From Macrostomum lignano (lineage: Eukaryota): a stretch of 64,000 bases of DNA. Made by a program: the position numbers and the translations under genes. Location of the stretch: the NCBI GenBank assembly GCA_002269645.1, contig NIVC01002767.1:78205-142204 (forward strand), read 5' to 3'. Below, piece after piece: positions 9,987-31,063 of the stretch; the first letter of the stretch is position 1, and each line of letters begins with the position of its first letter. Under the pieces are notes generated by a model, which was not told where the DNA came from, ran no database searches, and saw only the letters and a program-made list of their open reading frames with translations.

Positions 9987-10240
9987 GCCCAGCAACTGAC
10001 GATCTGGGAGGCTGGCCCAGCAACTGAGGATCTGGGAGGCTGGCCCAGCAACTGAGGATCTGGGAGGCTGGCCCAGCAACTGAGGATCTGGGAAGCTGGC
10101 CCAGCAACTGAGGATCTGGGAGGCTGGCCCAGCAACTGAAGATCTGGGAGGCTGGCCACAGCAACTGAGGATCTGGGAGGCTAGCGGCGGCCCAGTAACT
10201 GAGGATCTGGGAGGCTGGCGGCGGCCCAGTAACTGAGGAT
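9987..10240. repeat. 28-bp minisatellite family A (CAGCAACTGAGGATCTGGGAGGCTGGCC)n, copy 1
   Basis: Same unit as at 10952-11700, 16950-17122 and 17781-18235. Confidence 0.93.
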
Positions 10241-10342
10241 CAGCGATTTAAGTGGCATCCCGACTATGACTCGAACTCGAACCCGAAAATGGGTAGTTAA
10301 TTTAGCTCTTAGCAACCCAGAGCGCAGACGCGCCGGGCCAGC

Positions 10343-13300
10343 TCAGACGGCGGTGAGCCTAACGATGCGGTCGGGCCGCTGGGCGGAGATCTTCACGAAG
10401 CCCATGAGCTGCAGCTGAGCGCAGGCCCGCATGAATCGAACTTGCAGCATCTGTGACGGCGACGGCGAATTCTCGGCATTGCCAGCGTCACCATCGGCGG
10501 CGCGGCAGGCGGCAAACGACTGCATGAGCTCCACGGTGCGGACCAGCCTGCGGCACTCCTTCACCAGGCGGAAGGCCACGCGCACGTCCGCCATGCCGTT
10601 TGACTCGCTGACCTCCGCCTCATCGCCGCCCAGCAGCTGCTTCTCAAGCCAGCCGGCCGGATCGGCGGCGAAGGCGGCCGTCAGCGCAGGCCGGCAGTTG
10701 GCGTGGAGGCCGGGCAGCGGCGCTTGCAGGTCGGCGCGTAGGCGCCTATTGAGACAATCGGCCAGGCGGGCGCGCAGATTGGCGCCGATTTTGGTCTGCT
10801 CAGCGCGACGGCTGATCTCAGCCTCCAGCTGCTGGCGCTGCGCCTGCCGGGTCAGCTGATGCGGGCAAATAGGTGCGTTTCCATGGCAATAAGTAGGTAC
10901 GTTTCCATGGCAATAAATAGGCACAGTGAGTTGCTGCAAACTAGAAAGACACAGCAACTGAGGATCTGGGAGGCTGGCCCAGCAACTGAGGATCTGGGAG
11001 GCTGGCCCAGCAACTGAGGATCTGGGAGGCTGGCCCAGCAACTGAGGATCTGGGAGGCTGGCCCAGCAACTGAGGATCTGGGAGGCTGGCAAACAGCAAC
11101 TGAGGATCTGGGAGGCTGGCAAACAGCAACTGAGGATCTGGGAGGCTGGCAAACAGCAACTGAGGATCTGGGAGGCTGGCCCAGCAACTGAGCATCTGGG
11201 AGGCTGGCAAACAGCAACTGAGGATCTGGGAGGCTGGCAAACAGCAACTGAGGATCTGGGAGGCTGGCAAACAGCAACTGAGGATCTGGGAGGCTGGCCC
11301 AGCAACTGAGGATCTGGGAGGCTGGTCCAGCAACTGAGGATCTGGGAGGCTGGCAAACAGCAACTGAGGATCTGGGAGGCTGGCAAACAGCAACTGAGGA
11401 TCTGGGAGGCTGGCCCAGCAACTGAGGATCTGGGAGGCTGGTCCAGCAACTGAGGATCTGGGAGGCTGGCAAACAGCAACTGAGGATCTGGGAGGCTGGC
11501 CCAGCAACTGAGCATCTGGGAGGCTGGCAAACAGCAACTGAGGATCTGGGAGGCTGGCAAACAGCAACTGAGGATCTGGGAGGCTGGCAAACAGCAACTG
11601 AGGATCTGGGAGGCTGGCAAACAGCAACTGAGGATCTGGGAGGCTGGCCCAGCAACTGAGGATCTGGGAGGCTGGCCCAGCAACTGAGAATCTGGGAGGG
11701 TAGCGGCCAAGCTTGAGAATGGGAGGCCCGAAGAACACAGAGTACCCCAGCCACACACCTTGTGCTCGGAGCCGTGGTCGCCCTGTCCGGGGCTGGCAAC
11801 TGCAGGTTCGGTCAAAGCTGCGGTCTCGTCCCGCCGTCTGGTTAGTTCATCGGCTAGTTCGTCAAGATAGGCGGACCAGCCGGCAAGCAGCGACTGGGTG
11901 AGCGAGTCGCAGTCCTCATTGAGCAGGTTGAGCAGCTGCCTGGCGGACTCCACCCTGGCCAGCACAGTCTCGGTGCTCTCAGCCAGCAGGGCGGCCAGGC
12001 GGCTCAGGTATTCCTCGCTGTCGCACAGGTGCTGCCGGTTGCTAAGCAACAGAGAATAGATGTCCCGACGTGAGTCCCAGTTGAGCAGTTTGCCAATGAG
12101 CTGCATGACCAGCGGCACCGCGCGCAGCTGGCGAAGGTGCGCCGTGCCGGCCGGGTCCTCGGCGCCGATATGGCCGAGCAGCGCGAGCCTCAGCCGCAGC
12201 ATGAAGGCCGCTATGGAGAACTCTCTCTCGTCGAAGGCTTCAACTAGACAGTCAAAAGTCGGCCGGCTGAGGCGGAAATGCCACTGCCGGCAGTTGATGA
12301 GGACGCGGTCCAGCACCCGGTCGAACAGGATGCCGGCCGGGGCGGACCGGAAGCAGCGGACGGACAGGCGGGCCAAGGCGCGGCTGGACAGCAGAGACTG
12401 CAGGCTGGCCAGAGTCTTGGACAGGCTGCACACACAGGCCACGGGCAGCTGGGCCGCGTAGTGGCTGCTCACCTGGAGGAGATCGATCGGGTGACGTTGC
12501 AAAATTAGCAGCATGCAGTAACCCCCCCCCCCCCTCCGACAAACACGGGGAGGGCGGCTGAGGATCGGACACTGCCATCAGATCCGACACTGCCATCCGA
12601 CACTTTACCAGCATAAAGTACTACTTACTAAGTAGACGAAAACATGTCACTCACAAGAATAAATTTGTTTAGCGCCTTGCCGCTGGTGGTCTCGTCAAAG
12701 TCGCGAATCAGCAGAACGAGCTGCGGCGGCTGTTGCTTTTGCTGCTTCTGCCTTTTGTCCGCGGCAGCCCCGAAGACGCTCTGATAGACTTCAGCAGCCA
12801 GCAGAAACGTGTGCTTTATATTGACAGATACTTTGCCAGCCTGTACCGGGGTGGACCCGATCTCCGGCAGCCACTGGGCCAGCGCTTTGGAGAACAGCTG
12901 AGTAGACGATACCAGGTCGCTGGAGTCAACCTGAGGGAGACAGTTGCAGAGCGTAAGGGTGTTGGTTGGATCTTCGGGTCTCTCGTCAGGGTTAGGTCTC
13001 AATGGGATATTTTTTAAAGATCTTAGAGTAATCTCTAGGCACAGCCAAGTCTGTCCGGAAAGCCCCAGGCATAGTCAAGACTGTCCGGGAAATCCCAGGC
13101 ACAGCCAAGTCTGTCCGGAAAGCCCCAGGCATAGTCAAGACTGTCCGGGAAATCCCCAGGCACAGCCAAGTCTGTCCGGAAAGCCCCAGGCATAGTCAAG
13201 ACTGTCCGGGAAATCCCCAGGCACAGCCAAGTCTGTCCGGAAAGCCCCAGGTATAGTCAAGACTGTCCGGGAAATCCCCAGGCACAGCCAAGTCTGTCCG

Positions 13301-14113
13301 GAAAGCCCCAGGCATAGTCAAGACTGTCCGGGAAATCTCCAGGCACAGTCAAGTCTGTCCGGAAAGCCCCAGGCATAGTCAAGGCTGTCCGGGAAATCCC
13401 CAGGCATAGTCAAGACTGTCCGGGAAATCCCCAGGCATAGTCAAGAGTGTCCGGGAAATTCCAAGGTTTCTGAAGTGTCCGGAAAATCTCAGTGTCTTTT
13501 CAAGGTCACTGATGAGTCCCTAGGCCTTACCAAAGTTTGTCAAGGTAACCGAAGAATCCCTGTGACCTACCTGAGCCAGTCGGAAATTCCCACTCGCCTC
13601 AAGGCTGGCGGTCAGGCCGGACAGCATGGCGTCCCTGTCGGGCGTGTTGACCCCGGAGTGCAGCGCGGCGAACGGCAGCCGGCCAGCCAGGCAGTCGAAG
13701 AAGCCGTCGTCATCGGCGGTTGGCGAGTCCGACCGTCGACGCCACCGGAGCAGCCATTCGGCGTGCTGTCCGGCCAGAAAGTCGGCCAAACTGCTGCAAA
13801 CGCCGACGTTGGACTCGGCGAGGACGCTGGCCGCCTGCTGTTCGTACCAGGGCCAGACGGCGGCGAATCGAGCGTCGGCCGCCGCCTGCTCAGCGGCTGC
13901 GTCACCACCGCCGGCGACGCCGCTGTCAATCTTCATGGCCAGCGGCTGAGGCGACAGGGCGCGACGGCGGCTTTTGCCGGCCGACTGCGGAGGCGGCGGC
14001 TGCTTGGCTGGCGTCCCCGCTGCGGCGCCCGAAGCCCTGGCAAACTTCGGCAGCCGAGCCAGCAGGGCGGGCGGGCCGTCCAGAATGAGCAGTCGGCGAG
14101 GGGCTGGCTTCAT
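10343..14113 (-). CDS. ORC3: Origin recognition complex subunit 3, 4 exons, ~681 aa
   Basis: Exons 14113-13571, 12930-12655, 12472-11759, 10855-10343, all phase 0 and [20 protein letters not shown] matches ORC3 IPTAAL.LGVN..DH; [12 protein letters not shown]...LNKFILVSS; [20 protein letters not shown]; C-terminal winged helix [12 protein letters not shown]...[16 protein letters not shown]....DRIVRLT. Confidence 0.93.
10952..11700. repeat. 28/29-bp minisatellite family A, copy 2 (ORC3 intron 3)
   Basis: CAGCAACTGAGGATCTGGGAGGCTGGC(CC/AAA) units. Confidence 0.95.
13037..13460. repeat. ~30-bp dimeric minisatellite (CAGGCACAGCCAAGTCTGTCCGGAAAGCCC / CAGGCATAGTCAAGACTGTCCGGGAAATCC) in ORC3 intron 1
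   Basis: Alternating related monomers. Confidence 0.9.
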
Positions 14114-14261
14114 TGTGCTACTTGAAGTAGTTTATGTTCACGCGACTATAGTGGGGGAGTTTTGATCAGGAGCTTTTCATGAAACCACGGTAGGAATCGG
14201 GTGAACGATAATCTATGAATAAATTCAAGTTCGGCCTTTTTAAATCGCCTAGTAGAGTTGT

Positions 14262-14645
14262 AGCGCCCCCAACTACAAGGCCAAAGGGGTGGTGGCGCCC
14301 CCATCTACAAGGCCGAGGGGGTGAGGGCGCCCCCATCTACAAGGCAGAGGGGGTGAGGGCGCCCCCATCTACAAGGCAGAGGGGGTGGTGGCGCCCCCAA
14401 CTCCAAGGCCAAGGGGGTGAGGGCCCCCAAATACAAGGCCAAGGGGGTGGCGGCGCCCCCAACTCCAAGGCCAAGGGGGTGAGGGCGCCCCCAACTCCAA
14501 GGCCAAGGGGGTGGCGGCGCCCCCAACTACAAGGCCAAGGGGGTGGCGGCGCCTCCAACTACAAGGCCAAGGGGGTGAGGGCGCCCCCAACTACAAGGCC
14601 GAGGGGGTGGCGGCGCCCCCAACTCCAAGGCCAAGGGGGTGGCAA
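14262..14645. repeat. ~32-bp minisatellite (GGCGCCCCCAACTACAAGGCCAAGGGGGTG..) in the VPS51-ORC3 spacer
   Basis: Tandem units. Confidence 0.9.
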
Positions 14646-15365
14646 CCTCAATCAGTGACTTATTTAAGGTTTTTAAAGATAATGCATTCTCTATATATTT
14701 TAAGAGAAGCTACTGTCAAACAAACCTGGATATCAGAAACGATTGTATTTCTGTTTGGTTTCTAGTAACAATTTTATTATTATACTAATATTAATTGTTC
14801 ATTTAACTACAAAGAGCTAGGTGGACAATGTGATGTGCACGAAAAACGGAAAAGCAAATTTGAACAGTAGTATGCATAGCATATTGTCAGAAAATCTATT
14901 CAAATCACCAGAATTTGAAGTGTCAATAAAGTCAGAGAGAATTATAACGAATTAGACAATTACATGCAACAAATTGAAAACTGGAAGACAATTAACTGGC
15001 TCTATCTGTAACAATGCTTACCAATAAATAACAATGGCATACAAAGCTGAAAAAGCGCCATGAAAATTTTTTTACACTTTTATAACAACTCTAAGACTAA
15101 GCAATATCCTATGAGAAAAGTACATTGATATACTAATTAGGGTCCGCAAGCTAAGACTGAAACTGTATTGCATCGGCTTATAAGGTTTACAGAGTTTATT
15201 TTGACTGAAGTTTACTCGAAAGTACACGAAATCAAATAATAGTACATCATATCAAATTAAGAGTACATAAACTCTTATTAAAGTACACAACCCCATTAAA
15301 GTATACTGGCTTTTTATTTAAAAGTACAAGAACCATAATAAAAGTACATCCACAAACAAAAAGAC

Positions 15366-18300
15366 TCAGTCCCGCTCAACGATGAGCTCAACAACAGACT
15401 GCTCCATGGAGACGGGATCGATGCAGCGGTGCGCGGCGCTGGCCAGAATCTCCTCGAGCAGAAAGTGCACAACACTGTCGTCGGACACGTAGCGCCAGAG
15501 AAACGCGTGCAGATAGTGGCAGTCCACCTGCACCTGCTGCAGGCCGTAGCGGCCGAAGGTCTTCAACCGGACGCATTCTAGCAGGGTTTTCAAAGCTAAC
15601 CGGACAACTCCGGACACAACGGAGGCGCGTCCGAATTCGGCCGGACCGAGAAGGTCGACTTTGTCGCTGAACAGGCGGTGCAGCAGGCTGTTGCCGAGGG
15701 TGGACGGCGTTGCCGACCATTGGCTGCGGCTGGCGGCAGTCAGCGGCCGGCGGGCGAGCCGGCTGGCGCTGCTGTCCGAGGACCGGTCGCCGCCGCCGCG
15801 GCCGCCGCCACCGCTAGGCGCTTCATCGTATAGGCTGGACACCGAAGCGTCGATGCCGGCGAGATCTTCAACGACACGTTTGACAACGGCGCGAACTGAA
15901 CGGGGCTCGATGCCCTGCGGAATTCGACAGTAAATGACAGTATAGAGTACAGTAAATTACAGTATAGAGTACAGTAAATGACAGTATAGAGTACAGTAAA
16001 TTACAGTATAGAGTACAGTAAATGACAGTATAGAGTACAGTAAATGACAGTATAGAGTACAGTAAATGACAGTATAGAGTACAGTAAATGACAGTATAGA
16101 GTACAGTAAATGACAGTATAGAGTACAGTAAATGACAGTATAGAGTACAGTAAATGACAGTATAGAGTACAGTAAATGACAGTATAGAGTACAGTAAATG
16201 ACAGTATAGAGTACAGTAAATGACAGTATAGAGTACAGTAAATGACAGTATAGAGTACAGTAAATGACAGTATAGAGTACAGTAAATGACAGTATGGAGT
16301 ACAGTAAATGACAGTATAGAGTACAGTAAATGACAGTATAGAGTAAAGTAAATTACAGTAGCTTACAGCATGAGATGTGGTAGCTTTTACAATGAATTTA
16401 AATATTCTAGATACAGTATGCAAACATTTATGAATCATTAACTACTATGAGTAGATAATCAGCACTCGACGGCAGGCCCCACCGTACCTGCAGCCAGTCC
16501 CTGGCATCCACCGACTTGCGCAGCATGCCGGCCAGGGTGCCGCCGCTAGCGCAGACGTAGGCCTGCAGCAGCTCGGCAGCCGAGTCGCTGTACACCGCCG
16601 ACAACTCGCTGACGGGCGTCACCAAAGCCTCCGCCTGGGGAGACTCCGGCACCAGGAATTGCTCGTCTGCCAGGGTGCACAGGTAGTGCAGAGAGGAGTT
16701 GCGAAAGTCCAAACAGTAGCGGGACAGAAGCAGCAGCAGGAGAGGCGGTGGCGTTGGCGACAGCTGGGCGAGGCGGGCGCATTGGGTGGCCTGGTGGTTC
16801 AGGAAGCCGGCCAGGAGCTCCTGGCGGACGGCGCGCACGCAGAACCGTTCGCGGAATGCCGGCTTCAGCGAGAAGCTCACGTCCGTTGCTAGGAAGGCCT
16901 GCGAGTGGTTCGGGACGACATTGGGATGATTATGGATTCTTAAATGAAAGATCTGGGAGGTCGGCGCTGGCCCAGTAACTGAGGATCTGGGAGGCTGGCC
17001 CAGCAACTGAGGATCTGGGAGGCTGGCCCAGCAACTGAGGATCTGGGAGGCTGGCTCAGCAACTGAGGATCTGGGAGGCTGGCTCAGCAACTGAGGATCT
17101 GGGAGGCTGGCCCAGCAACTGAGTGAAGTGATACATTTTGGCTCTAGAAAGCTCCCATCCAGATTGAATGTATTTTAACCAATGAATGCGCTCCAAATAG
17201 CAAAAGCTGAGGACACGACCCCAACCTCAACCAATGAAAAGCAGTTATGTACCATCCAATGCGATCAAGACTGAAAAGTACTATAAAAGCTCATGTTAAC
17301 CAAGCAAGAAGCTCGCCTTTTTTCTGCTCGCTCCGCCTCTCCACGCCCTTGCCTCTCCTTCGCCATTCTCCTAGCTTACCTCGTTTGACTATTTTGATTG
17401 ACACAGTTAGGGTCTCAACCCAAACACCAAAACTTATAAGTCGACTTACTAAAGCCAAACCAACACCCAATCCACGTTTCACAATAGACTGAACCTTCGG
17501 TTCACCCGAACAACTAGAAACACCTTGTGACTTAAATCGAACGAGCTTCTTATTTGGAATTCCACCTTAGACATTATATTTTGTGAGAAAACATCTCGAG
17601 ATTGTGACCATCAAATACAACGGTCTGTAAGTTACCATCAAGTGTTTGCATCATCAGGAAAAGTCAGTTGAATCCGCCGCCTCAGTTATTTGGCTCTCAC
17701 ATTGATATTTGAAGTAGAACAAGAGCCATAGAAGTGAGAGACCAGAAGAAGAACAAGAACATATATTTTAAAATATTTCATGAGGATCTGGGAGGCTGGC
17801 TCAGCAACTGAGGATCTGGGAGGCTGGCTCAGCAACTGAGGATCTGGGAGGCTGGCCCAGCAACTGAGGATCTGGGAGGCTGGCCCAGCAACTGAGGATC
17901 TGGGAGGCTGGCTCAGCAACTGAGAATCTGGGAGGCTGGCCCAGCAACTGAGCATCTGGGAGGCTGGCCCAGCAACTGAGGATCTGGGAGGCTGGCCCAG
18001 CAACTGAGGATCTGGGAGGCTGGCCCAGCAACTGAGGATCTGGGAGGCTGGCCCAGCAACTGAGGATCTGGGAGGCTGGCCCAGCAACTGAGCATCTGGG
18101 AGGCTGGCCCAGCAACTGAGGATCTGGGAGGCTGGCCCAGCAACTGAGGATCTGGGAGGCTGGCCCAGCAACTGAGGATCTGGGAGGCTGGCCCAGCAAC
18201 TGAGGATCTGGGAGGCTGGCCCAGCAACTGAGGAACTGCACACAGGACAAAGCAATAAAACAATAAAACAAGAGGTCCCCCTCACCTGCAGCCCAGCAAG

Positions 18301-20288
18301 GGCGGCCTTCACAGCGTCCACCAGCTCCGTGAGCAGGCCGGCCATCAGCTGAGGCAGGCTGACACTGCGGGCCCCGGCGGTGGCCAGCTGGGAGCGGAGG
18401 CCGGACAGCGCGGCGGTCAGGCGGAGGTCCAGCTGCGCCCGCACCGCAGCCGCCCGCTCGGCAGCAGCGTCGCACACCACGGCCAAGGCTCTGACTGACA
18501 GCTCGCCCTCGGTGACCAGCCGGTGCATGGCCTGCAGCTTGCGGTGGAATCTGTCGCAGGCGCGCACCAGCAGGGAGTCGCCGGTGCCGCCGGACTCTCG
18601 GGCTTCAAGACAGAACCGCTTGGACACGATGGCCAGGTAGGAGCGCATGACTGACTCGTGGTAGGCCTCGAGCTTGGCGCGGGACTCGGGACTGGTTTGG
18701 GATATTGAGGAAGGAATGGGATGGGAAACCTAATGACTAACTCAAACAAATGAAAAAATCAAGATATTGGAATCCTCTTGATAAAACCCTGGGGTAGAAA
18801 AACTTTTTGATCCCAAGGGCCAGATAAAGAATCTAGCTTTTGACTACGAGCCAGACGAGAGTGGAAAGGAGATAAGAGAAGAGAGAATAGAGGAGAGAGG
18901 GGAAAGGAGAAAGAAGAGAGAAGAGAGAAGAGAGAAGAGAGGACAGAAGCAAGAAGAGAGAAGAGAAGAGAAGATAGGAGAGAGAAGAGAGAAGATAGAG
19001 GGAAGAGTAGAGAGGGGAGAGAAGAGGGGAGAGGAGAGAAGTTTCAAAGGACCCGAGGGCCGGACAGATGCTTTGCAGAACGCATGTGGCACGGGTACCG
19101 GAGCTTGCTCGACCCATGTGCGATGGGATAAAATCCCATGAAATAAGTATACCTGTATAATGAATACAAAAATCCTCACCTGGGAAAGATGTCGCCAAAC
19201 ACAGCGATGAGAATGCAGAGCTCGGACACCAGGTGGTTGCAGCCCTGGTCAACAAACTGCAGCACGTCGTCCTGCAGGCTGCCAGCCTGAGCTTCGAGGT
19301 CGCCCAGCAGGCGCTGCATCCGCGGGTCGGCCTGACGCAGGAAAGCCGCCGACAGGTCGGCCTCGGACTCGCCCAGCTGGCCGAGCAGGTCCACCAGTTC
19401 CGCCAGCTGCCTGGCGTCTGGGGCGCCGCCACCACTGCCGCCTTCGCCGCCGCTCTCGGTGCCGCTGCCGCCTTCGTTAAACCGCTGCCACAGCTGGGCG
19501 CGCAGCTCGGCCATGATGGCCAGGCAGTCCGCTCTGCGAATTTGGTAAAAGACGGCGATGAAGAACCCGCCAGCCCGCTAGATCTGTGGAGAACCCGCCA
19601 GCCCGCTAGATCTGTGGAGAACCAGCCCGCTAGATCTGTGGAGAACCAGCCCTCTAGATCTGTGGAGAACCCGCCAGCCGATCGCCAGATGCACTCACCT
19701 GATAGGCCGGAAGCTCGGCAGATCGGCGTACCGACTGAGCACCCGGTCGGCCTGTTGCCAAGCTCGAATGGCCTGCTGGTGAGCTCCCTCACGTCGCAGC
19801 TCGGTGAGCCGAGCCGGCAGGTCCAGCAGGTACTGCAGCTTGTGCAGCAGGGCGGACACCCCGGCCAGCCGCTTCAACTCGGCCCGCTTGCCGCCTACGT
19901 GCTGGCGGACGTCAGCAGCCTGCTGGCTCATTGCGGACACGCTCTCAGCCAGGTTGTTCATCTCCTGCTCCATCCGGTGGAAGTCGCTCTTCATCTTTCT
20001 AATAGTATCGGTGGCCGATATGAATTTGGAATAATTATCGTAGACCAGAGTCTGCATGTCGGAGTCCAGCTGGCGGATCTGGTCAACCATCTGCTGCTCC
20101 TTTGCCATGAGGCTGGTCAGCGGCTGCTCCTGCAGCAGCTTGCTTAGGTACACCTCCGGGTCGAAGCCGGCGCCGTCAATGTCGCACGGATCGACATTCA
20201 GGCCGACTGAGGCGGCGTCGGACTCGACCTGGCCCTGCTGGTAGAAACTGCGCAGCCGGCTGTTGCGGCTGGACCGGTCGGGTTCGGC
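15366..20288 (-). CDS. VPS51: GARP/EARP complex subunit VPS51 (Ang2/fat-free), 5 exons, ~770 aa; initiator ATG absent from the genomic frame
   Basis: Exons 20288-19699, 19533-19180, 18691-18286, 16898-16488, 15914-15366 are phase-consistent. DPCDIDGAGFDPEVYL...QIRQLDSDMQTLVYDNYSKFISATDTIRKMK and C-terminal [64 protein letters not shown] are diagnostic. Confidence 0.95.
15928..16355. repeat. 22-bp minisatellite (AGTAAATGACAGTATAGAGTAC)n in VPS51 intron 4
   Basis: Tandem units. Confidence 0.95.
16950..17122. repeat. 28-bp minisatellite family A, copy 3 (VPS51 intron 3, acceptor side)
   Basis: Same unit as copy 1. Confidence 0.92.
17781..18235. repeat. 28-bp minisatellite family A, copy 4 (VPS51 intron 3, donor side)
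   Basis: Same unit as copy 1. Confidence 0.95.
18860..19035. repeat. AG-rich low-complexity tract in VPS51 intron 2
   Basis: GAGAGAAGA-type purine tract. Confidence 0.85.
19563..19675. repeat. Short ~21-27-bp tandem repeat (GCCCGCTAGATCTGTGGAGAACC) in VPS51 intron 1
   Basis: About 4 units. Confidence 0.8.
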
Positions 20289-20574
20289 CTGAAACAGCAG
20301 GGGGGTCCATGGACTGCTGGGTCTGTTGGATGTGGCAAGGACTGCTGGCTCTGTTGGATGGGGCAAGGACTGCTAGAGTCCATGGACTGATGACTCTGTT
20401 GTATGGGGCAAGGACTGCTAGAGTCAATGGACTGCTGGCTCTATTGTATGGGGCAAGGACTGCCAAGGTTCCATTGGATTGGCAAACTGAAATCCAAGGA
20501 CTGATTAGAAAATTCTAACTGAAATGGTAGGCGGTAGTCAAGGACATATAGTTCAACTTGGACTGGAAAACTGG

Positions 20575-21125
20575 AAGCTAAGGACTGCTAATAGTTCTAC
20601 TTGGACTGGATAACTGGCAGCCAAGGACTGCTTTAGTTCTACTTGGACTGGATAACTGGCAGCCAAGGACTGCTATAGTTATACTTGGACTGGATAACTG
20701 GCAGCCAAGGACTGCTATAGTTCTACTTGGACTGGATAACTGGCAGCCAAGGACTGCTATAGTTCTACTTGGACTGGATAACTGGCAGCCAAGGACTGCT
20801 ATAGTTCTACTTGGACTGGATAACTGGCAGCCTAGGACTGCTAATAGTTCTACTTGGACTGGATAACTGGCAGCCAAGGACTGCTATAGTTATACTTGGA
20901 CTGGATAACTGGCAGCCAAGGACTGCTATAGTTCTACTTGGACTGGATAACTGGCAGCCAAGGACTGCTATAGTTCAACTTGGACTGGAAAACTGGCAGC
21001 CAAAGACTGCTATAGTTCTACTTGGACTGGATAACTGGCAGCCAAGGACTGCTATAGTTCTACTTGGACTAGATAACTGGCAGCCAAGGACTGCTAAAGT
21101 TCTACTTGGACTGGATAACTGGCCA
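20575..21125. repeat. 42-bp minisatellite (CCAAGGACTGCTATAGTTCTACTTGGACTGGATAACTGGCAG)n in the gelsolin-VPS51 spacer
   Basis: About 13 units; related degenerate units also at 20310-20470. Confidence 0.93.
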
Positions 21126-21416
21126 AGGATGGATTTTTGTATAAACTAGAATAAAAAAAAAGCAGAACACGATCGCGAATAGCATATTAACAAATCCGCA
21201 ACTACCAAAATACTCGTATATAAGCTTTTGTTTTAAACAATCTATTTATGGAATAAACAAATTTTAAAGTCAATTCTAGAGACAAGAATAAACGGTTTAT
21301 AATTCGATAAACAGATCACTCTGCAACCAATATAATGAACTTAAATAAAAACAGGAGAAACAATCCATAGAATGTCCAGGCAAATGTTTATTTGCCAGGC
21401 AGTCAGCTGCCAAAGC

Positions 21417-24400
21417 TTAGAAGCTGGCCTCGAAAGCGGCTTTAGTCTTGCTGGGAGCCTCGGGAGTGACCACAGTCACCGGGGCGAACGGATTCTCGCT
21501 GGATTGTAGGTAATTCTGAAATTTTTAACAGATTAGATATATTGGAAGACTATATAAGGCTTTAATGCTATCAAATACGTCAGGATAGAACAGTCAGCTA
21601 AGCGATCTCACGTGAGCATAGCTCAGGGCGTTGCGACGCTCAGCCACGGAGGCCTCCTTGCCAACGTAAACGTAGACTTCGAATCCATTGTCAATGATGA
21701 ATACGTCCTTAAATATATAGAAGATTGTGTCATGCAGATTTGAAAAATCAACTGCGCACGATACTACTTACAACCCTGTTGAGTAAGTAGTGTGTAAAAC
21801 CAATAACTTAAATAAAAAACTCACCTCTTCAGTGATGCCGCCGCGATCGAGTGACTCTGACTGAATCTGGTCGAACTGCAGATTGCCCGACTCGTCGGAC
21901 AGTCTGTAAGACAAGGGTGAAAATTCGGGAGTGACAATTACAGAGTGACAATCCTGGAGTGAAAAATCGGGAGTGACAATTGCAGTCACAATCCTGGAGT
22001 GAAAAGTCGGGAGTGACAATCCTGGAGTGAAAAGTCAGGAGTGACAATTTCAGAGTGACAATCCTAGAGTGAAAAGTCGGGAGTGACAATTACAGAGTGA
22101 CAATCCTGGAGTGAAAAATCGGGAGTGACAATTGCAGTCACAATCCTGGAGTGAAAAGTCGGGAGTGACAATCCTGGAGTGAAAAGTCAGGAGTGACAAT
22201 TGCAGAGTGACAATCCTAGAGTGAAAAGTCGGGAGTGACAACTGCAAAGTGACAATCCTGGAGTGAAAATTGCAGAGTGACAATCGAAAAAGCACTCGCC
22301 TGAGCATCCGCTTCTGTCCAGAGCGGCTCTGCTGCGATCCAAACGGGTTCGAGTCGGCCGGATCCGCCTCCTCTTCGGTAAGTGACGAGTAGAATTCGTG
22401 CTGAATTGAGCGAGTATTGATTTTCTAATTATAGTGAATTTGATTATTAGCAGCATTCATGGCTTTTTATGGCTCAAATTCACTCACATTGGGATCGGCG
22501 CTGTCCTCTTCAATGACCTCGCAGGACAGGCGTCCGTTCCGCTCGCTCTTGAGTCCCTGCAGGTACTGGGCAGCTTTGAACCGCTCGTTCTTATTGGCCC
22601 CGCTGCTGTTCCACTGGATGGCCCGGTCGCCAAGGTCGAGAATGTACACGTCGGTGTTGTCAAGCGATTTGCGCGACTTTGACACCTCCCAAACTACGAT
22701 GTTTTGGCGTTCGCCCTGATGTAGGGGTATGGGGTTTGCATTTTTAGATACGATAACGATACCAGTAAGGATCGAAAGTACCACAGACTTTAAGTACTTT
22801 TGACTAAAATTACACCAGACTGAAAGTACATCAGACCAAAAGTACAATAGACGGAAAGTACATCAGACTAAAAGTACATCAGACTAAAATTACACCAGAC
22901 TGAAAGTACATCAGACCAAAAGTACAATAGACGGAAAGTACATCAGACTAAAAGTACATCAGACTAAAAGTACACCAGACTAAAAGTACACCAGACTAAA
23001 AGTACATGACTGGAAGTACACCAGACCAAAAGTACACCAGACTAAAGTACACAATACTGAAACTACATCCGACTGAAAATACACTTGATGTAACTATATG
23101 CCACCTTAAAGTGCAGCAGCCTAGGCTTGTACTCGCGAGTTTTAACGCTGCGAAATCCGCTCGGACAGCCGCCGGCCAGGTAGGTGATCTCAGGAAAGTA
23201 GCTGCGCATCAGGCGACTCTCGTGGCCTTGAACCTCGCGGTGCTGCACAGGCAGGTCGTCTAGCAGAGTGTCCAGCTCCACAGTCTTGTAGGCGGCGGTG
23301 CCGTACTCATCAGCCGTGCTCTCCTTGCCAATCCAGAAGTGCACATCGTAGCAGAGCTTGTCCTGCTCCATATAGGCGTTCAGAATAATGTAGGAGTCGC
23401 CGCTATAGAATTTGCCGTACAATTCTTTGGGCCATTCGACAACTTTGAAGTTCTAGAAAAGGAAAAAGTAATAAAGTAAATATGAAATCACTATCCAACT
23501 GACTACTGAAAGTAACAGTTTGGGAAAGGCAAAGCAACGATTATATATTTTAGTTGAAACCGAACGGAACACCCCACTGAGGAGCATGACTGCAGTACAT
23601 CTCCAGGTTTAGAAATCCTGCTGCCACAGGCCGTTCCTCCATAGACAACGCAAAGTCTGGGGTTGGTAGAAAGGCCCTAATTCTAGGTGTCTAAAGCTTA
23701 ATTAGGTCGCTATAAGCTCAAATGCCCGTGTTACGAGTAAAACCCGATAAAAATGACACCTTGGCCAAGAAGCATCCCAAGAGTCAGTTCCGTCGCCTCA
23801 GAGTCGTTGCAGGTCACACAGGTAAAATAGAAAAGAATTGACTCTAGAGACGACTTTAAAACGACGATATGTCACGGTACAAGTAGCCAAAAAGTCGTCA
23901 AAGAGTGCCTAAGAGTCAATTTAAGGAGTGCCTTATTGTCTGCGACTCTGGGGTATCTGAGGCGTGTTGGAGTCGCTGTAGAATCACTGAGTAGCATCTA
24001 AAGCGCATCTGCGTCATTTTATGCATCAGCTAGCAGAATCGCATTTAGCATTCATCATGACAACTCTATTTAGTCTACTTCAGTTAGTAGACAGTTAAGC
24101 GCTAAAACTGGCGGCTCTTTTACGATTCTGAAACTCGCTTAATGCACTCGTGACTCAACAGTCCCTCTTTTTCGCATTTCAGCCGTTAAAAGTCACAAGA
24201 ATCGTCCCAGAATCGCTAGTAGTGAGTTGTTTTTCAACCCGTTGTTTTCAACGGGGAAAAACAGAAAGGGTTGCTTTATTAAATACTCGCCTCAATTCGC
24301 CAGACGTACAGTTGAGGCCGCCTGTTCTCAAGTACTGGCGCCCAGGCCCGCTCCTTCTCGGCGGACTCCTCTGAAAAGTGCAAATTTCAAGTCACTGAAG

Positions 24401-24536
24401 CCTGTAGATTATATCACAGATCACAAAGGTTTTGTCACTGTGCCAAATATGTCTCACTTTTCACTTGTCTATCCAAATCTGAACCGAACAGGGCCAAATT
24501 GCTGTCCTTCCAATCGTACTGCTTAGCTTTCTGCAT
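21417..24536 (-). CDS. Gelsolin-family three-domain actin-severing protein (severin/fragmin type), 8 exons, ~369 aa
   Basis: Exons 24536-24458 (MQKAKQYDWKDSNLALFGSDLDRQVK), 24370-24291 (..YVWRIE), 23452-23105 (NFKVVEWPKELYGKFYSGDSYIIL...HFWIGKEST.DEYGTAAYKTVELD...VQHREVQGHES), 22715-22488, 22400-22300, 21903-21825, 21707-21612, 21515-21417. Phases are consistent; two introns use GC donors. Confidence 0.95.
21915..22285. repeat. Compound minisatellite (GAGTGACAATCCTGGAGTGAAAAGTCGG..) in a gelsolin intron
   Basis: Tandem nested units. Confidence 0.88.
22800..23050. repeat. ~15-bp repeat (AAAAGTACA(T/C)CAGACT) in a gelsolin intron
   Basis: Degenerate tandem units. Confidence 0.85.
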
Positions 24537-24616
24537 GATTATTAACTCATACTCAACTTATGCAACAGCTTTAGCTAGCAGGCTAGATTGAAGAGAATTA
24601 GAATTCCAACACTGCA

Positions 24617-24626
24617 CTATATATAG
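24617..24626 (-). promoter_or_regulatory. Possible TATA box upstream of the gelsolin gene
   Basis: CTATATATAG about 85 nt upstream of the gelsolin ATG (24536); positional inference only. Confidence 0.3.
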
Positions 24627-25064
24627 CTATTCGAGTTTCAAAGTTCAAGCCAGCGTGCGAGAGAGCCAGTGTGCGGCACTCCTACTCAACTCAGCTAGGA
24701 AATGGGGAGGAGGCCGGCGCTGCATGTTATTACAGGCACAATTGAAAAGCAACGACGGTGCACGGCCAGAGGGCGCTCAAGAAGTTCGCGACTTGGGGCT
24801 CTTCGATCTGGTTCTGCAAACTAGCAATGCTTTAGCGGAGCAGGTGCTACAGCCTAGCCTAGGAGGAGAGACAATACCATTTGCAGCGCTGCCATTTTGC
24901 AGAGCTGCATGTCGCACTGTGTATGAAATTGCAGAGCTCTTTGCGAGTTGAAAGAATAAGAAGAACTACGAAAGCCGCTTGTACCTCGTAAAACGGCTTG
25001 AAATGTAAAACTGCAGAATAATTCTGCCCCAGGCTCCTATTCCTCTGTCGTGCACCCTGCACTC

Positions 25065-25680
<616 letters not shown>

Positions 25681-26542
25681 AAATAACCTACAGTTAGCAG
25701 TTAAATAAAGCAACCAAGAGCAGCACGTCAGCAGATTTAAGCGTTTTAATTCATCAATAAAAATCAAGCACTAAAATTAACAGATGCGCTGGAGGCATTC
25801 AATTAGCTGAATAACTTAATGCAATTAGGTGGCAAAATTGTTCGGCAACCTTTAATTACTGGTAACCACCGAGTTATTACCGGTAGAAAGCGCAAAAATG
25901 GCTTGGTTAAGTGTCTACTGTTATGAACTGCATTGAACACAGCGGTGCACTGTATCAAACATCTTTAAAACTAGTTAATCGGACTCAAAAAACAAGGCAA
26001 ATAACATCGTAATTGCATCATAATTGTACTCGTAATATAATATGCTATCGAAATGCGCTGCTATGAAATCTGTCAAATAATGCAGTTAAATAATCAACGA
26101 TAAAATACGCTAAACAGGCTAAAATATCGGTCCGCAAGAACTATATTGTTTAATAAAACAATCCAATTTTCACTAACAATAGGGCGGGCAGCGGTGCCCC
26201 TCTGACAAAATAGAGAAATTAGACAGTTTGCAAAAATAATGTGAGAAGCAACAGTACTAAAAGATTGGCATGAAAGCTACAGCTAAGCATGGGGGGCGTA
26301 GCCAGACTCTCTGATGTGCCAGAATCCGAGGCTCGATTTCAAGTGCAGTCGCATTAATTTGGGACTAAATTGAATTGTCCCGACTTGGCTCTGCTCGTGC
26401 AATTAACACCCTTGAGGGCCAACCCCCCCCCCCAGACACAGTGAGGTGTACATGCCTAAGGATGAGCGTACACTCCCCTGCCTCTAGTAAAAAATACAGC
26501 TAAGCATAATGAAAGATAGGTGTGCTACCGGTACGTGTCATG

Positions 26543-28949
26543 TCACGTGGCGTGCCTTAACGGCATCAGGAAGGTGGCAAAGTGCTCGTACACCACGAAG
26601 GTGATGCAGCAGGCCGGAGTCACTCTCAGCAGGGTTGGCAGCAAGCCTTTGTAGAAGCCGCGCCAGCCTTCAACGGCTAGAAGGTCGCGGCAGACGCGGA
26701 GGGCGCCGCGCGACTCCCTGTGCTGCTCCTGCAGGCGGGACCTGACCACCTGGTAGGGATAAGTGGTGGCCGCGGCCACAATCTTGGAGAGGGCGGCGCA
26801 GCCCAGGTACACTAGGGTGGGCAGCTTGGCGTTCGCGGCCAGCTGATAGGCGGATGTGTACTGGTTCTTCATCTTCTCGTACACCAGAAACTGGATGGCG
26901 CCGTGGGAGACGCCGAACAGGCCGGGCAAGTAGCCCTGGTTGAGTGAGGCAACGCAGAAGTTTGCGTACGTCAGGATTCAAAGTCTAGGATATTCGACAA
27001 CCCGGAATTATTGATAGATATCTGCTAACATACTCCGATAGATAAATTTATATGCCAACTACGAGCTACCCTATTAATCTATCTACCAACTAACCCACTA
27101 ATCTATTTACCAATAAACCCACTAATCTACCGATTAACCTACTAATCTATCTACCAATCAACCTACTAATATATCTATTGTACCATTTAACCCACTAATC
27201 TATCTATTGTACCAATTAACCTACTAATCTATCTACCAACTAACCCACTAATCTATCTACCAATTAACCTACTTATCTACCAATTAATCTACTAATCTAT
27301 CTACCAATTAACCTACTTATCTACCAATTAATCTACTAATCTATCTACTAATTAACCTACTCATCTATCTACCAATTAACCTACTCATCTATCTACCAAT
27401 TAACCTACTTATCTATCTACCAATCAACCTACTAATCTATCTATTGTACCATTTAACCCACTAATCTATCTATTGTACCAATTAACCCACTAATCTATCT
27501 ACCAATTAGCCTACTTATCTACCAATTAATCTACTAATCTATCTACCAATTAACCTACTTATCTACCAATTAATCTACTAATCTATCTACTAATTAACCT
27601 ACTCATCTATCTACCAATTAACCTACTCATCTATCTACCAATTAACCTACTAATCGATCTACTTTATTTACCTACTAATCGATCTACCAGTGAACCTACT
27701 AATCTATCTACCAATTAACCTACTTATCTACCAATTAATCTACTAATCTATCTACTAATTAACCTACTCATCTATCTACCAATTAACATTCTCATCTATC
27801 TACCAATTAACCTACTTATCTATCTACCAATCAACCTACTAATCTATCTATTGTACCATTTAACCCACTAATCTATCTATTGTACCAATTAACGTACTAA
27901 TCTATCTACCAATTAACCTACTAATTTATCTAACAATTAACCTAATCATCTATCTACCAAATAACCTACTAATCGATCTACTTTATTTACCTACTAATCG
28001 ATCTACCAGTGAACCTACTAATCAATCTACCAATTAACCTACCAATCTATCTACCATTTAACCTACTAATCGATCTACTAATTAACCTACATATCGATCT
28101 ACTAATAAACCTACTAATCTGTCTATCAACTAACCTATCAACCAAACAATATATCAACTTAGAAGTCAATAATAATCAAAGCTAAATGCCGCAGTCTCCC
28201 AAGACTCCCTCCCACCTTGTACAGCCCGGGCAGACCCTCCAGCCGGGCGATGCTGTACAGAGCGTGCAGCATGCCCCTGTAGCGATGCGCCGCTACCGAG
28301 GCGTCAGATCCCAGGCCGTACTGCAGGCACAGCCGGGTCTTGCACACCCAGATAGGGTTGGTGAACATCAGCGTGACCGCGCCGGACGCCGCTGCCGCTC
28401 CCATCAAGTGTCCGGCTGGCAGACGGGCTGTCCGGTCGCCGCCCTGCAGCTGCACCTTGGCGGCCTCGTAGAACAGGAAGTACAGACCCCAGCTGGCGCC
28501 CGCGCCCCACAGGTTCGGCACCACCCCGGCGTACAGGCCTGTCAGGCCCTGCGTCCGGTAGATGCTGGACAGCGCGTGCATCAGGCCGCGGTACACCGGC
28601 CGGGAGCTGGGACGGCCGCTGGCGCCGACTCCTTCGTCCACCTGGTTGGGGTGGGGGTGGTGAGTCATTGGGGATCAGAGACTTCCGCATCGACTAATTC
28701 TATTGAGCACTACTGGTTGTATCTCTATGTAGTAATTCATTGGGATACCTTCGCTACCTGATACTTGAGAACTCTTGAAAGCTTGAGAACTCTCACCTGG
28801 AAGCGAATCTTGACCAGGTCAAGCGGGTGCAAGGCCAGTGTGGACAGCAGGCCGCCAGCCACGCCGGCCGCCATGTTCTCCCAGTGCACGTTGCTTAGCA
28901 ACTGACGCTGCCAGCTGTCGGAGCCGTTGCTACTGCTGCCCGACTGCAT
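26543..28949 (-). CDS. SLC25A32: Mitochondrial folate/FAD carrier, 3 exons, ~320 aa
   Basis: Exons 28949(or 28943)-28797, 28641-28216, 26935-26543. Carrier motifs HPLDLVKIRFQ, NPIWVCKTRLCLQY and YPYQVVRSRLQ; GVVPNLWGAGASWGLYFLFY, GLFGVSHGAIQFLVYE and GFYKGLLPTLLRVTPACCITFVVYE match SLC25A32. Confidence 0.93.
27060..28140. repeat. AT-rich compound repeat (ACCAATTAACCTACTAATCTATCT) in SLC25A32 intron 2
   Basis: Degenerate tandem units. Confidence 0.9.
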
Positions 28950-29024
28950 TGTGAGCAGGAAAAGCAAGAGTCATATTGGCCAGAGGCTCATGAGGAAATT
29001 CTCTTCAGTTGATCCAGTGCTCAT

Positions 29025-29750
29025 GGGAGATTTTCCCTCTGTTGATCCAGGGCTCATGGGAGATTTTCCCTCTGTTGATCCAGGGCTCATGGGAGATTTT
29101 CCCTCTGTTGATCCAGTGCTCATGGGAGATTTTCCCTCTGTTGATCCATGGCTCATGAGGAGAATTTGGTTGATCCAGGGCTGATAGGGGGGATTTACCT
29201 CAGTTGATCCAGGGCTCATAGGGGGAATTATGCTTAGTTGATCCAGAGCTTATGGGGGGAATTTCGCTTGGTTGATCCAGGGCTGATAGGGGGGATTTAC
29301 CTCAGTTGATCCAGGGCTCATAGGGAGGATTTCCCTTAGTTGATCCAGGGCTCATAGGGGGGAATTATGCTTGGATGATCCAGGGCTCATGGGGGGAATT
29401 TCCCTTAGTTGATCCAGGGCTCATGGGGGAATTTCTCTTAGTTGATCCAGGGCTTATGGGGGGAATTTCGCTTGGATGATCCAGGGCTCAAAGGGGGGAT
29501 TTCCCTTAGTTGATCCAGGGCTCATAGGGGGAATTATGCTTGGATGATCCAGGGCTCATGGGGGGAATTTCCCTTAGTTGATCCAGGGCTCATGGGGGAA
29601 TTTCCCTTAGTTGATCCAGGGCTTATGGGGGGAATTTCGCTTGGATGATCCAGGGCTCAAAGGGGGGATTTCCCTTAGTTGATTGAGGGCTCATGGGGGG
29701 AATTTCCCCAGTTGATTTAGGGCTCCCGAGGGGAATTTCCCCAGTTGATC
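29025..29750. repeat. ~33-bp minisatellite (GTTGATCCAGGGCTCATGGGGGAATTTCCCTTA) upstream of SLC25A32
   Basis: Tandem units. Confidence 0.9.
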
Positions 29751-30098
29751 TAGGAGTCCAGCTATTGAAACTGACCCTGTGCGATATTTAGATTAAGGTT
29801 TAGTTATATACCTGTAGAAATTCTAAAAACTCAAAGCCAAAGGCTGTGGCAGAACCAATAAGAAAAGACACGCAAATCTGCTTTGCTCGGACGCCATAAA
29901 TCAATCAATTGATTTATTATCTGAATACAGATATATAGCGTGTTACACGAGACAATTAAATGCCACTTGAGATGTTTAAACATTGTAGCGTATGCAGAGT
30001 TAATTCTAGAATCGCGACTAAAACTAAACAGATTTCAAATTTTTTGCAACATATACTACTGATTGTAATAAGAACCAGCATTAGAGTCCTTCATTTGA

Positions 30099-31063
30099 TT
30101 AATAAGTTGACTCGTCCAACTGCACGTCGAAGCTGATGTCGACCATTTCCTCTTCTTCAACCGGTTTCAACCAGTTCAGCCGCAGGTTGGCCTGCCTGTT
30201 GGTGCGCGCCTCAGCGTCGGCTGCGGCATTGGCGCCCTCCGCCTGGCTGTCCGCCGGGCCGCGCCGCTCCTGATAAAATATTATAGCCGACATGTCGATC
30301 CGAGAGCCGACGGACACGTAGGGCAGGTAGCTGGGCAGGTTGACCCCGCCGCCAAATACATAGTGATTGACAGTTGACTCGGCCCAGCGCCAGCTGCCGC
30401 CCGGGTTCACCTTTCTGTAGAGCTTCTTTGTGCACAGAATGAACCGGCAGCCCCGGTTGTTGGCTTGGAATATCTGCCAATTGGATGGGGAGGGGCTGTT
30501 GGAGCATGGACCACTGGGAGTAAAATGGACTGAATACAAATGCAAGGACTACTGAGAGTAGAATGGATTGGACGCTTGAATGCAAGGACCACTGCGAGTA
30601 GAATGGACTGGACACTTGATTGCAAGGACCACTGCGAGTATGATGGACTAGACACAAATACAAGGACCACTGCGAGTATGATGGACTAGACACAAATGCA
30701 AGGACCACTGCGAGTATGGACTGGACACTTATATGCAAGGACCACTGCGAGTATGATGGACTGGAAACTTGAATTCAAGGAATCAAGGATTCAAGAAATT
30801 TAAACAATTGAGATAATAATTCTATCCATGAAAACCGAATGCGTTACCTTGGTAACGGTACCCCGCAGCCTAATTTCGTTATAGTCGCGCGGAGCGGCGG
30901 CCCGAAGCTCGCCGCCTTCGCTTCCAGGCTGTCGTCTACTGCGATTATCGCTGTAGTTCTTGCCATCCCAAGTGTACAAGCCGGCTGTGAGTAGCTGAAG
31001 CCGCTGAGGCTGCTGCTGCTGAAGTAGCTGACGGGCGATTGACTTGTAAGCCGCTGAGAGCAT
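30099..31063 (-). CDS. Divergent mitochondrial SSB-like OB-fold protein, paralog 2; 2 exons, ~196 aa
   Basis: Exons 31063-30848 (donor GTAACG) and 30473-30099. Presequence-like N-terminus; RDYNEIRLRGTVTK..CRFILCT..YVSVGSRIDMSAIIFYQ aligns with SSB (SLNRVHLLGRV..FSLAT..YVKKGSRIYLEGKI) and with paralog 1. Confidence 0.65.
30505..30780. repeat. ~40-bp repeat (TGCAAGGACCACTGCGAGTATGATGGACTAGACAC..) in the paralog 2 intron
   Basis: About 7 degenerate units. Confidence 0.85.

What the first reader, a model, noticed from the sequence alone, without database searches (positions are those of the whole stretch)
20270..21417. VPS51 has no genomic start codon; phase-0 acceptor at its N-terminus suggests the spliced-leader AUG initiates translation
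Seen: the VPS51 frame upstream of the first conserved block has no ATG (the track ORF starts at TTG 20366). A good acceptor ctgctgtttcag|GCC GAA CCC GAC at 20289/20288 is in phase 0. I found no ATG-plus-donor exon in the 1.1 kb up to the gelsolin stop, which is mostly the 42-bp array and gelsolin 3' UTR. Adding AUG yields MAEPDRSSRNSRLRSFY.., which aligns with the extreme N-terminus of VPS51 orthologs. Known: flatworm spliced leaders end in AUG, and that AUG can serve as initiator Met (shown for Schistosoma). Inference: this essential trafficking gene is translatable only after trans-splicing.
Basis: partly seen in the sequence, partly recalled or inferred. Interest (0 to 1): 0.8.

Follow-up and report, generated by a model that had tools for sequence, protein, structure and literature searches.

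The report
VPS51 start codon supplied by spliced leader
In this flatworm (Macrostomum lignano) contig the VPS51 trafficking gene has no start codon of its own, and almost certainly receives its AUG from the spliced-leader RNA that is trans-spliced onto the message; this mechanism is already known in flatworms, so the case is real but ordinary.

Summary
The window matches M. lignano Mlig_3_7 contig NIVC01002767.1 exactly over the 24.9 kb compared. VPS51 lies on the minus strand in 5 exons (20288..15366) and encodes 769 aa.

- **No genomic start codon.** An in-frame TAG sits at 20375..20373. No in-frame ATG precedes Met61, although residues 6-58 contain positions conserved in orthologs.
- **One acceptor.** The only pyrimidine-rich acceptor nearby is tttcag|GCC at 20290-89/20288. 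It is in phase 0 and fits the published trans-splice motif [T/C]TNCAG.
- **No cis exon.** No ATG-plus-donor exon exists in the 1.1 kb up to the gelsolin stop.
- **Annotation agrees.** GenBank PAA55357.1 ('partial') equals my model and starts at 20288.
- **The leader fits.** The published M. lignano leader ends ...TTGCATG. Adding AUG gives MAEPDRSSRNSRLRSFY, the same N-terminal length as Schistosoma VPS51.
- **New indirect evidence.** A sister assembly copy reads tttATG|GCC. The same CAG-to-ATG/CTG change recurs at three other gene 5' boundaries, while all 24 VPS51 cis-splice sites are intact. The likeliest cause is polishing of the assembly with RNA-seq, which would be a footprint of leader-bearing reads.

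The mechanism has been known since Cheng et al. 2006. Gelsolin next door shows the same dependence. No reads or peptides were seen directly. Interest is low to moderate.

The parts
20289..20307 (-). Pyrimidine tract plus AG acceptor (cccccctgctgtttcag). Proposed spliced-leader trans-splice acceptor, in phase 0 with the VPS51 reading frame.
   Evidence: It fits the M. lignano trans-splice motif [T/C]TNCAG (PMC8629364). The GenBank CDS of PAA55357.1 starts at the next base.
19699..20288 (-). VPS51 exon 1 (AEPDRSS...PSFRPI-). It has no ATG before Met61. The donor is CAG|gtgagt.
   Evidence: Pfam PF08700 E=1e-25.
19180..19533 (-). VPS51 exon 2
   Evidence: The model is identical to PAA55357.1.
18286..18691 (-). 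VPS51 exon 3
16488..16898 (-). VPS51 exon 4
15366..15914 (-). VPS51 exon 5 with stop TGA at 15368..15366. An AATAAA follows at about 15318..15313.
20373..20375 (-). In-frame TAG that closes the frame 84 nt upstream of the acceptor.
   Evidence: The upstream 'frame' is not kept between copies: they differ by indels of 28, 49 and 1 nt.
20291..21416 (-). Gelsolin-VPS51 intergenic region, the presumed outron removed by trans-splicing. It holds the gelsolin AATAAA at 21392..21387, the 42-bp tandem array at 20547..21123 and degenerate 28/45-bp repeats at 20311..20463.

Best explanation
VPS51 copy g3 of Macrostomum lignano (BOX15_Mlig030090g3) is made as a pre-mRNA whose 5' part, the outron, carries the 42-bp repeat array. 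It may be part of a polycistronic transcript with gelsolin upstream.

The spliceosome joins the 35-nt spliced leader (...CAAUUUAUUGCAUG) to the acceptor uuucag|GCC at 20289/20288. The leader's 3'-terminal AUG then sits directly in frame before GCC GAA CCC. It is the first AUG of the mature mRNA and starts translation of a 770-aa protein, MAEPDRSSRNSRLRSFY....

- **Shown:** the sequence anatomy, the organism, the leader sequence (from the literature) and the coincidence of the annotated 5' boundary with the acceptor.
- **Inferred:** the trans-splicing event at this site and initiation at the leader AUG.
For: 1. There is no in-frame genomic ATG between the TAG at 20375 and Met61, yet positions within residues 6-58 are invariant across orthologs.
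2. There is a single strong acceptor, in phase 0, and no plausible cis 5' exon.
3. The window is M. lignano. Its leader ends in ATG. A Macrostomum genome paper states that the leader's final ATG is likely a translation start codon (PMC10468722).
4. The GenBank CDSs of the three copies are 5'-partial. Those of g3 and g1 start at the first base after the acceptor, and that of g2 starts 3 nt later. The annotation pipeline cuts transcripts at peaks of leader-trimmed reads and then runs TransDecoder. A 5'-partial ORF that starts there means the transcript starts there.
5. Copy g1 (L003 5998-6000) reads ATG where g3 and g2 read CAG. Exons differ by only 0.2-0.7%.
6. The same CAG-to-ATG/CTG change occurs at the 5' boundaries of the mitochondrial carrier, ORC3 and RPL35A genes. 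In all, 9 of 15 boundary sites are changed, while 24 of 24 VPS51 cis-splice sites are intact.
7. The assembly was polished with Pilon using RNA-seq mapped by STAR. These changes are therefore best read as the leader's AUG carried in by reads, that is, read-level traces of ...AUG|GCCGAACCC.
8. Schistosoma VPS51 begins MEDDLQRKVIKQRLKQFY, with 11 residues before RL(K/R)xFY. This equals M+AEPDRSSRNS.
9. The mechanism is established in S. mansoni (Cheng et al. 2006, as cited in PMC12582326 and PMC9851317).
Against: - No leader-containing read, cDNA or peptide for this gene was seen directly. No near-identical transcript-derived protein turned up in the protein searches, and exact-ORF look-ups found nothing.
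- The leader AUG has U at -3, which is a weak context, although +4 is G. Leaky scanning to Met61 is therefore possible.
- The 'imprint' reading of the g1 ATG is an inference from the pattern and the published methods. It was not checked against raw reads.
Confidence: 0.85

Rival explanations
1. A cis-spliced 5' exon that was not recognised supplies an in-frame ATG and is spliced to the same acceptor.
For: The acceptor alone cannot tell cis- from trans-splicing. Parasitic flatworms share acceptors between the two (PMC12582326).
Against: - All phase-0 ATG...GT combinations in the 1.1 kb up to the gelsolin stop have poor donors, at most 4 of 9 consensus positions and none with GTRAG.
- The interval is mostly tandem repeat whose copy number differs between gene copies.
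- Gelsolin lies immediately upstream on the same strand.
- The GenBank transcript-based CDS is 5'-partial and starts at the acceptor.
Confidence: 0.04
2. Translation starts at the first genomic in-frame AUG (Met61, MAKEQQ), giving an N-terminally shortened VPS51. The upstream 60 codons would be 5' UTR.
For: The leader AUG has a weak -3 base. Met61 is the first genomic in-frame ATG.
Against: - The 60 upstream codons align with orthologs and include invariant positions (R6, L13, Y17, D34, P35, F43, L49, L58).
- The Pfam Vps51 N-terminal domain match starts at residue 37.
- An out-of-frame AUG at 20197 lies before Met61.
Confidence: 0.05
3. This copy and g2 are start-less, defective duplicates. 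The working gene is copy g1, which truly has a genomic ATG in place of the acceptor.
For: L003 reads tttATG|GCC. The DV1 line carries duplicated chromosomes, so spare copies exist (PMC8629364).
Against: - The same CA-to-AT, or A-to-T only, change appears at three other gene boundaries.
- Those include sites where ATG has no coding use (the ORC3 5' UTR, where the uORF is MKSS*) and sites where no copy keeps an AG (mitochondrial carrier, RPL35A).
- That pattern fits a polishing artefact, not selection.
- All copies keep intact reading frames and splice sites.
Confidence: 0.04
4. Non-AUG initiation (CUG at 20300 or 20297, or UUG at 20366) on transcripts that are not trans-spliced.
For: These near-cognate codons are in frame upstream.
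Against: - They lie in degenerate tandem repeat whose length and frame differ between copies.
- They sit behind several upstream AUGs.
- The resulting extension has no counterpart in orthologs.
Confidence: 0.02

Closest known systems
Spliced-leader AUG used as initiator methionine in Schistosoma mansoni (Cheng, Cohen, Ndegwa & Davis 2006, J Biol Chem 281:733; 'slORFs' in PMC9851317)
   Same: A flatworm leader with a 3'-terminal AUG is joined in frame to an ORF that lacks its own start codon. The conserved N-terminus is complete only with the leader's Met.
   Different: This is a different flatworm lineage (Macrostomorpha) with a different leader sequence (35 nt...TTGCATG). It is a different gene, and here there is only genomic and annotation evidence, with no cDNA or translation assay. 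Schistosoma's own VPS51 has a genomic ATG (S. mekongi, L007 1501).
M. lignano SL trans-splicing and operons (Wudarski et al. 2017, PMC5730564; Ustyantsev & Berezikov 2021, PMC8629364)
   Same: The acceptor motif is [T/C]TNCAG. VPS51 is a conserved housekeeping gene. The neighbours are co-oriented and trans-spliced. The gelsolin-VPS51 spacer is 1.1 kb, but more than half of it is tandem repeat, so the repeat-adjusted distance is below the authors' 1-kb operon threshold.
   Different: In the passages I read or searched (PMC5730564 by term search, PMC8629364 results section), those papers do not discuss the leader AUG as a start codon for particular genes. The GenBank entries simply flag the CDS as partial.
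Gelsolin-like gene immediately upstream in the same window
   Same: It is also 5'-partial. Its CDS starts directly after an acceptor (ttttcagaggag|TCC at 24365). An in-frame TGA lies 24 nt upstream and exon 1 has no ATG. The leader AUG would give MSAEKERAW.
   Different: It has tandem alternative acceptors 3 nt apart (copy g1's model starts at GAG). No ATG imprint is seen in any copy.

Membership tests
Flatworm mRNAs that take their initiator AUG from the spliced leader (Cheng et al. 2006 class) | The organism has a spliced leader ending in AUG | tested here: met
   The window is identical to an M. lignano contig. The leader is CGGTCTCTTACTGCGAAGACTCAATTTATTGCATG (PMC8629364; PMC5173321).
Flatworm mRNAs that take their initiator AUG from the spliced leader (Cheng et al. 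2006 class) | The mRNA is trans-spliced at an acceptor directly 5' of the ORF | tested here: met
   The evidence is indirect. The 5'-partial GenBank CDSs begin at the acceptor in copies g3 and g1, and 3 nt downstream of it in g2. They come from a pipeline driven by leader-containing reads. There is also an ATG imprint in copy g1. No read was seen directly.
Flatworm mRNAs that take their initiator AUG from the spliced leader (Cheng et al. 2006 class) | The leader AUG is in frame with the main ORF, with no intervening stop | tested here: met
   The acceptor is in phase 0. AUG|GCC GAA CCC... reads through 769 codons.
Flatworm mRNAs that take their initiator AUG from the spliced leader (Cheng et al. 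2006 class) | No genomic in-frame AUG upstream of the conserved N-terminus | tested here: met
   TAG lies at 20375 and the first in-frame ATG is Met61. Conserved positions lie before it. No cis exon candidate exists.
Flatworm mRNAs that take their initiator AUG from the spliced leader (Cheng et al. 2006 class) | Translation demonstrably starts at the leader AUG | not testable with these tools
   This needs N-terminal proteomics, ribosome profiling or a reporter assay.
VPS51 (Ang2/fat-free), subunit of the GARP and EARP tethering complexes | Vps51 N-terminal domain and full-length similarity to VPS51 orthologs | tested here: met
   PF08700 E=1e-25. The protein is 42-44% identical over 96-100% of its length to vertebrate VPS51, E about 1e-177.
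M. lignano operon (polycistronic unit resolved by SL trans-splicing) | Co-oriented trans-spliced neighbours with a repeat-adjusted intergenic distance under 1 kb | tested here: inconclusive
   Six co-oriented genes are annotated. The gelsolin-VPS51 spacer is 1128 nt, of which about 730 nt is tandem repeat. No transcript spanning the spacer was seen.

The most novel reading that the evidence does not exclude
The ATG/CTG found in place of the CAG acceptor at several gene 5' boundaries is real genomic sequence, not a polishing artefact. The boundaries are VPS51 copy g1, ORC3, the mitochondrial carrier and RPL35A. In that case the 3' end of the spliced leader would have been written back into the genome from trans-spliced mRNA by cDNA-mediated conversion. 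Some duplicated gene copies would then have swapped a leader-donated start codon for a genomic one.
Probability: 0.04. Interest if true: 0.8.

Novelty: new member of a known kind. Interest (0 to 1): 0.3.

Why it matters
**Biology.** This adds a clear example, outside the parasitic flatworms, of a conserved housekeeping gene whose reading frame is completed only by the spliced leader. The neighbouring gelsolin gene is a second example. Because Schistosoma VPS51 has its own ATG at the equivalent codon, the dependence arose or was lost within flatworms.

**Annotation.** Gene models flagged 'partial' in M. lignano that begin at a trans-splice acceptor in phase 0 are probably complete once Met is added.

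**Assembly quality.** The Mlig_3_7 assembly appears to carry leader-derived ATG/CTG in place of CAG at many trans-splice sites. This can destroy true acceptors and create false start codons or uORFs in silico. It may also lower the measured frequency of the acceptor motif.

Tried and rejected
- **Exact-product look-ups.** Three window ORFs were not on record.
- **First homolog search.** Exon 1 alone returned only hits of 344 aa or shorter and no Macrostomum protein. The tool seems to list only hits up to about 1.75 times the query length. The full-length query then found the M. lignano entries.
- **No transcript-derived hits.** No near-identical transcript-derived (Logan) protein appeared in the searches, so no contig showing the leader joined to GCCGAACCC could be fetched.
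- **Rfam.** A scan of the window found nothing.
- **SL RNA gene.** None is in the window. The 15-mer TCAATTTGTTGCATG at 14963-14977 has one mismatch to the leader's 3' end. It is not followed by a GT donor and does not match the leader further upstream, so I treated it as chance.
- **Papers.** Supplementary tables of PMC8629364 are not held. The Wasik et al. 2015 paper is not held.
- **cDNA-mediated conversion for the g1 ATG.** Rejected as the main reading. All four introns are present in every copy. Bases -4 and -5 stay genomic rather than leader-like. 'CTG' half-changes occur at other sites.
- **Crude pairwise comparison.** The BLAST-based comparison of copies is noisy in tandem repeats. I used only hand-checked sites from it.
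Full report
**What is there**

The feature lies on the minus strand. The stretch ...ccatggacccccctgctgtttcag|GCCGAACCCGACCGG... puts an AG at 20290-20289, and GCC starts at 20288. Walking upstream in frame from 20288 meets TAG at 20375..20373. The only start-like codons on the way are TTG 20366 and CTG 20300 and 20297. The first in-frame ATG is downstream, at Met61 (MAKEQQ).

I built the whole gene from a tblastn guide and by reading the junctions. The human VPS51 sequence used as the guide was recalled from memory and served only to locate exons. The exons are 20288-19699, 19533-19180, 18691-18286, 16898-16488 and 15914-15366. All introns are GT-AG, and the product is 769 codons plus TGA. Exon 1 matches Pfam PF08700 (Vps51 N-terminal) at E=1e-25. 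The full protein is 42-44% identical to vertebrate VPS51 across its length.

**Organism and annotation**

A gelsolin exon gave a 97% hit to Macrostomum lignano. The full-length VPS51 query then gave a 100% match to GenBank PAA55357.1, 'BOX15_Mlig030090g3, partial', which is 769 aa and begins AEPDRSS. Its locus on GCA_002269645.1 contig NIVC01002767.1 is base-for-base identical to the window.

The deposited CDS therefore starts exactly at 20288 and is flagged as lacking a start. Two further assembly copies, g2 (PAA59625.1) and g1 (PAA59791.1), are also 'partial'. The g1 model begins at the same acceptor and the g2 model 3 nt inside it. The older UniProt models begin PWTPLLFQAEPD and have no Met either.

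The annotation came from a pipeline (TBONE) that cuts transcripts at peaks of leader-trimmed RNA-seq reads and then calls ORFs with TransDecoder (PMC5730564). A 5'-partial ORF that begins at the first base after an acceptor implies that the processed transcript begins there.

**Excluding a genomic start**

The 1128 nt between the gelsolin stop (TAA 21419-21417, AATAAA at 21392) and the acceptor contain six minus-strand ATGs. Every phase-0 ATG...|GT exon that can be drawn from them has a donor matching at most 4 of 9 consensus positions. The gene's real donors are all CAG|GT(G/A).

Most of the interval is the 42-bp array (20547-21123, 13.7 copies) and degenerate relatives of it. Between the three copies this region differs by indels of 28, 49 and 1 nt, so the apparent upstream reading frame is not maintained. 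The 20290/89 site is the only pyrimidine-rich AG between 20600 and 20200. It fits the published M. lignano trans-splice motif [T/C]TNCAG (PMC8629364).

**Does a leader AUG fit?**

The M. lignano leader is CGGTCTCTTACTGCGAAGACTCAATTTATTGCATG. Joined at the acceptor it gives AUG GCC GAA CCC..., which translates to MAEPDRSSRNSRLRSFY.

Schistosoma mansoni and S. mekongi VPS51 begin MEDDLQRKVIKQRLKQFY and MEEDLQRKAIKQRLKKFY. They have the same number of residues before the conserved RL(K/R)xFY. Positions R6, L13, Y17, D34, P35, F43, L49 and L58 are invariant in the six-species alignment. The region upstream of Met61 is therefore coding.

S. mekongi has a genomic ATG at the equivalent codon (L007 1501). 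Reliance on the leader is thus a Macrostomum-side state for this gene.

**An unexpected line of evidence**

In copy g1 the acceptor reads ctgctgtttATG|GCC instead of ...tttCAG|GCC. The exons of the three copies differ by only 0.2-0.7%. A chance double substitution that creates an in-frame ATG at exactly this spot is therefore not credible.

Comparison of the extended loci showed the same change at other gene 5' boundaries:

| Gene boundary | Window copy (g3) | Copy g2 | Copy g1 |
|---|---|---|---|
| VPS51 | tttCAG | tttCAG | tttATG |
| ORC3, 64 nt upstream of its ATG | tttcATG\|AAAAGC (14180-14178) | ATG | tttcCAG |
| Mitochondrial carrier | ttttcCTG\|CTC (28958-28956) | ttttcATG | ttttcATG |
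| RPL35A | cccgCTG\|CC (8961-8959) | cccgATG | cccgCTG |
| Gelsolin | unchanged | unchanged | unchanged |

In all, 9 of 15 boundary sites are changed. At two genes no copy keeps an AG, which a real trans-splice site cannot lack. By contrast all 24 VPS51 cis-splice sites are intact.

At ORC3 the ATG is out of frame (uORF MKSS*), so selection cannot explain it. Only positions -3 and -2 change, -2 more often than -3. Positions -4 and -5 stay genomic.

The Mlig_3_7 assembly was polished with Pilon using Illumina DNA reads and RNA-seq mapped by STAR. For the transcriptome mapping, STAR was run end-to-end. The simplest account is that reads carrying the last bases of the leader were forced onto the genome, and Pilon then wrote A and/or U over C and A.

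I did not see the reads, so this is an inference.

**Mechanism and its standing**

A leader-donated initiator AUG is established for Schistosoma mansoni. There, 28% of trans-spliced cDNAs have the leader AUG in frame and more than 40 require it (Cheng et al. 2006, as summarised in PMC9851317, and PMC12582326). [quoted passage not shown] VPS51 here is a new, well-supported member of that class, not a new mechanism.

The neighbouring gelsolin gene behaves the same way. Its CDS starts at 24365 right after ttttcagaggag|, an in-frame TGA lies 24 nt upstream, and exon 1 has no ATG. A paralog's model also starts ESAEKE.

In this six-gene, co-oriented block the leader AUG falls as follows:
- gelsolin and VPS51: in frame and required;
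- the mitochondrial carrier: in frame but redundant;
- ORC3 and RPL35A: out of frame.

**What remains open**

No read, cDNA or peptide was seen. The leader AUG has U at -3 and G at +4, so some leaky scanning to Met61 is possible. Whether gelsolin and VPS51 are co-transcribed is not shown. The spacer is 1.1 kb, about 0.4 kb after removing repeats, which is under the 1-kb repeat-adjusted operon threshold of PMC8629364.

**Verdict**

It is a new member of a known kind, and interest is low to moderate. The by-product may be more useful in practice than the finding itself: leader-derived ATG/CTG apparently written into the reference assembly at trans-splice sites.

Noticed in passing
window 24365 (minus strand); L001 1924, L002 2125, L003 1919: The gelsolin-like gene upstream is also 5'-partial. 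Its CDS starts right after ttttcagaggag|TCC (copy g1's model starts 3 nt earlier, at GAG). An in-frame TGA lies 24 nt upstream and exon 1 has no ATG. The leader AUG would give MSAEKERAW or MESAEKERAW. This is a second gene in the window that depends on the leader AUG.
   Followed up: partly
window 14180..14178 (minus); L002 11922-11924; compare L003 10669-10671: 64 nt upstream of the ORC3 start codon the window reads gtggtttcATG|AAAAGC, where copy g1 reads gtggtttcCAG|AAAAGC. The ATG is out of frame (uORF MKSS*). It is probably the ORC3 trans-splice acceptor overwritten by leader bases during RNA-seq polishing.
   Followed up: partly
window 28958..28956 (mitochondrial carrier CDS start 28955) and 8961..8959 (RPL35A; trans-splice site 2 nt before CDS start 8956): At both gene boundaries the window reads CTG and a sister copy reads ATG. 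No copy keeps the AG that a trans-splice site needs. This points to a systematic CAG-to-(A/C)TG artefact in the Mlig_3_7 assembly.
   Followed up: partly
window about 30288..8546 (minus strand): Six co-oriented annotated genes lie here: an unknown 202-aa protein, a mitochondrial carrier, gelsolin, VPS51, ORC3 and RPL35A. Their spacers are rich in tandem repeats. The block is a candidate multi-gene operon. A WormBase/UniProt model (A0A1I8IU63) fuses VPS51 with ORC3.
   Followed up: no
window 17781..18238 and 16966..17123 (VPS51 intron 3), about 10900..11800 (inside the ORC3 gene): The same 28-bp tandem repeat (GCTGGCCCAGCAACTGAGGATCTGGGAG) fills an intron of VPS51 and non-coding sequence inside the neighbouring ORC3 gene. 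It creates long spurious ORFs such as the 723-aa ORF at 10343..12514.
   Followed up: no
window 14963..14977 (minus): TCAATTTGTTGCATG matches the last 15 nt of the spliced leader with one mismatch. It lies in the VPS51-ORC3 spacer, is not followed by a GT donor and shows no further leader similarity upstream. It is probably chance.
   Followed up: partly
L007 1460..1503 (Schistosoma mekongi VPS51): The Schistosoma ortholog has a genomic ATG at the codon equivalent to the leader-donated one. An acceptor-like ttttctttag lies about 30 nt upstream of it.
   Followed up: no
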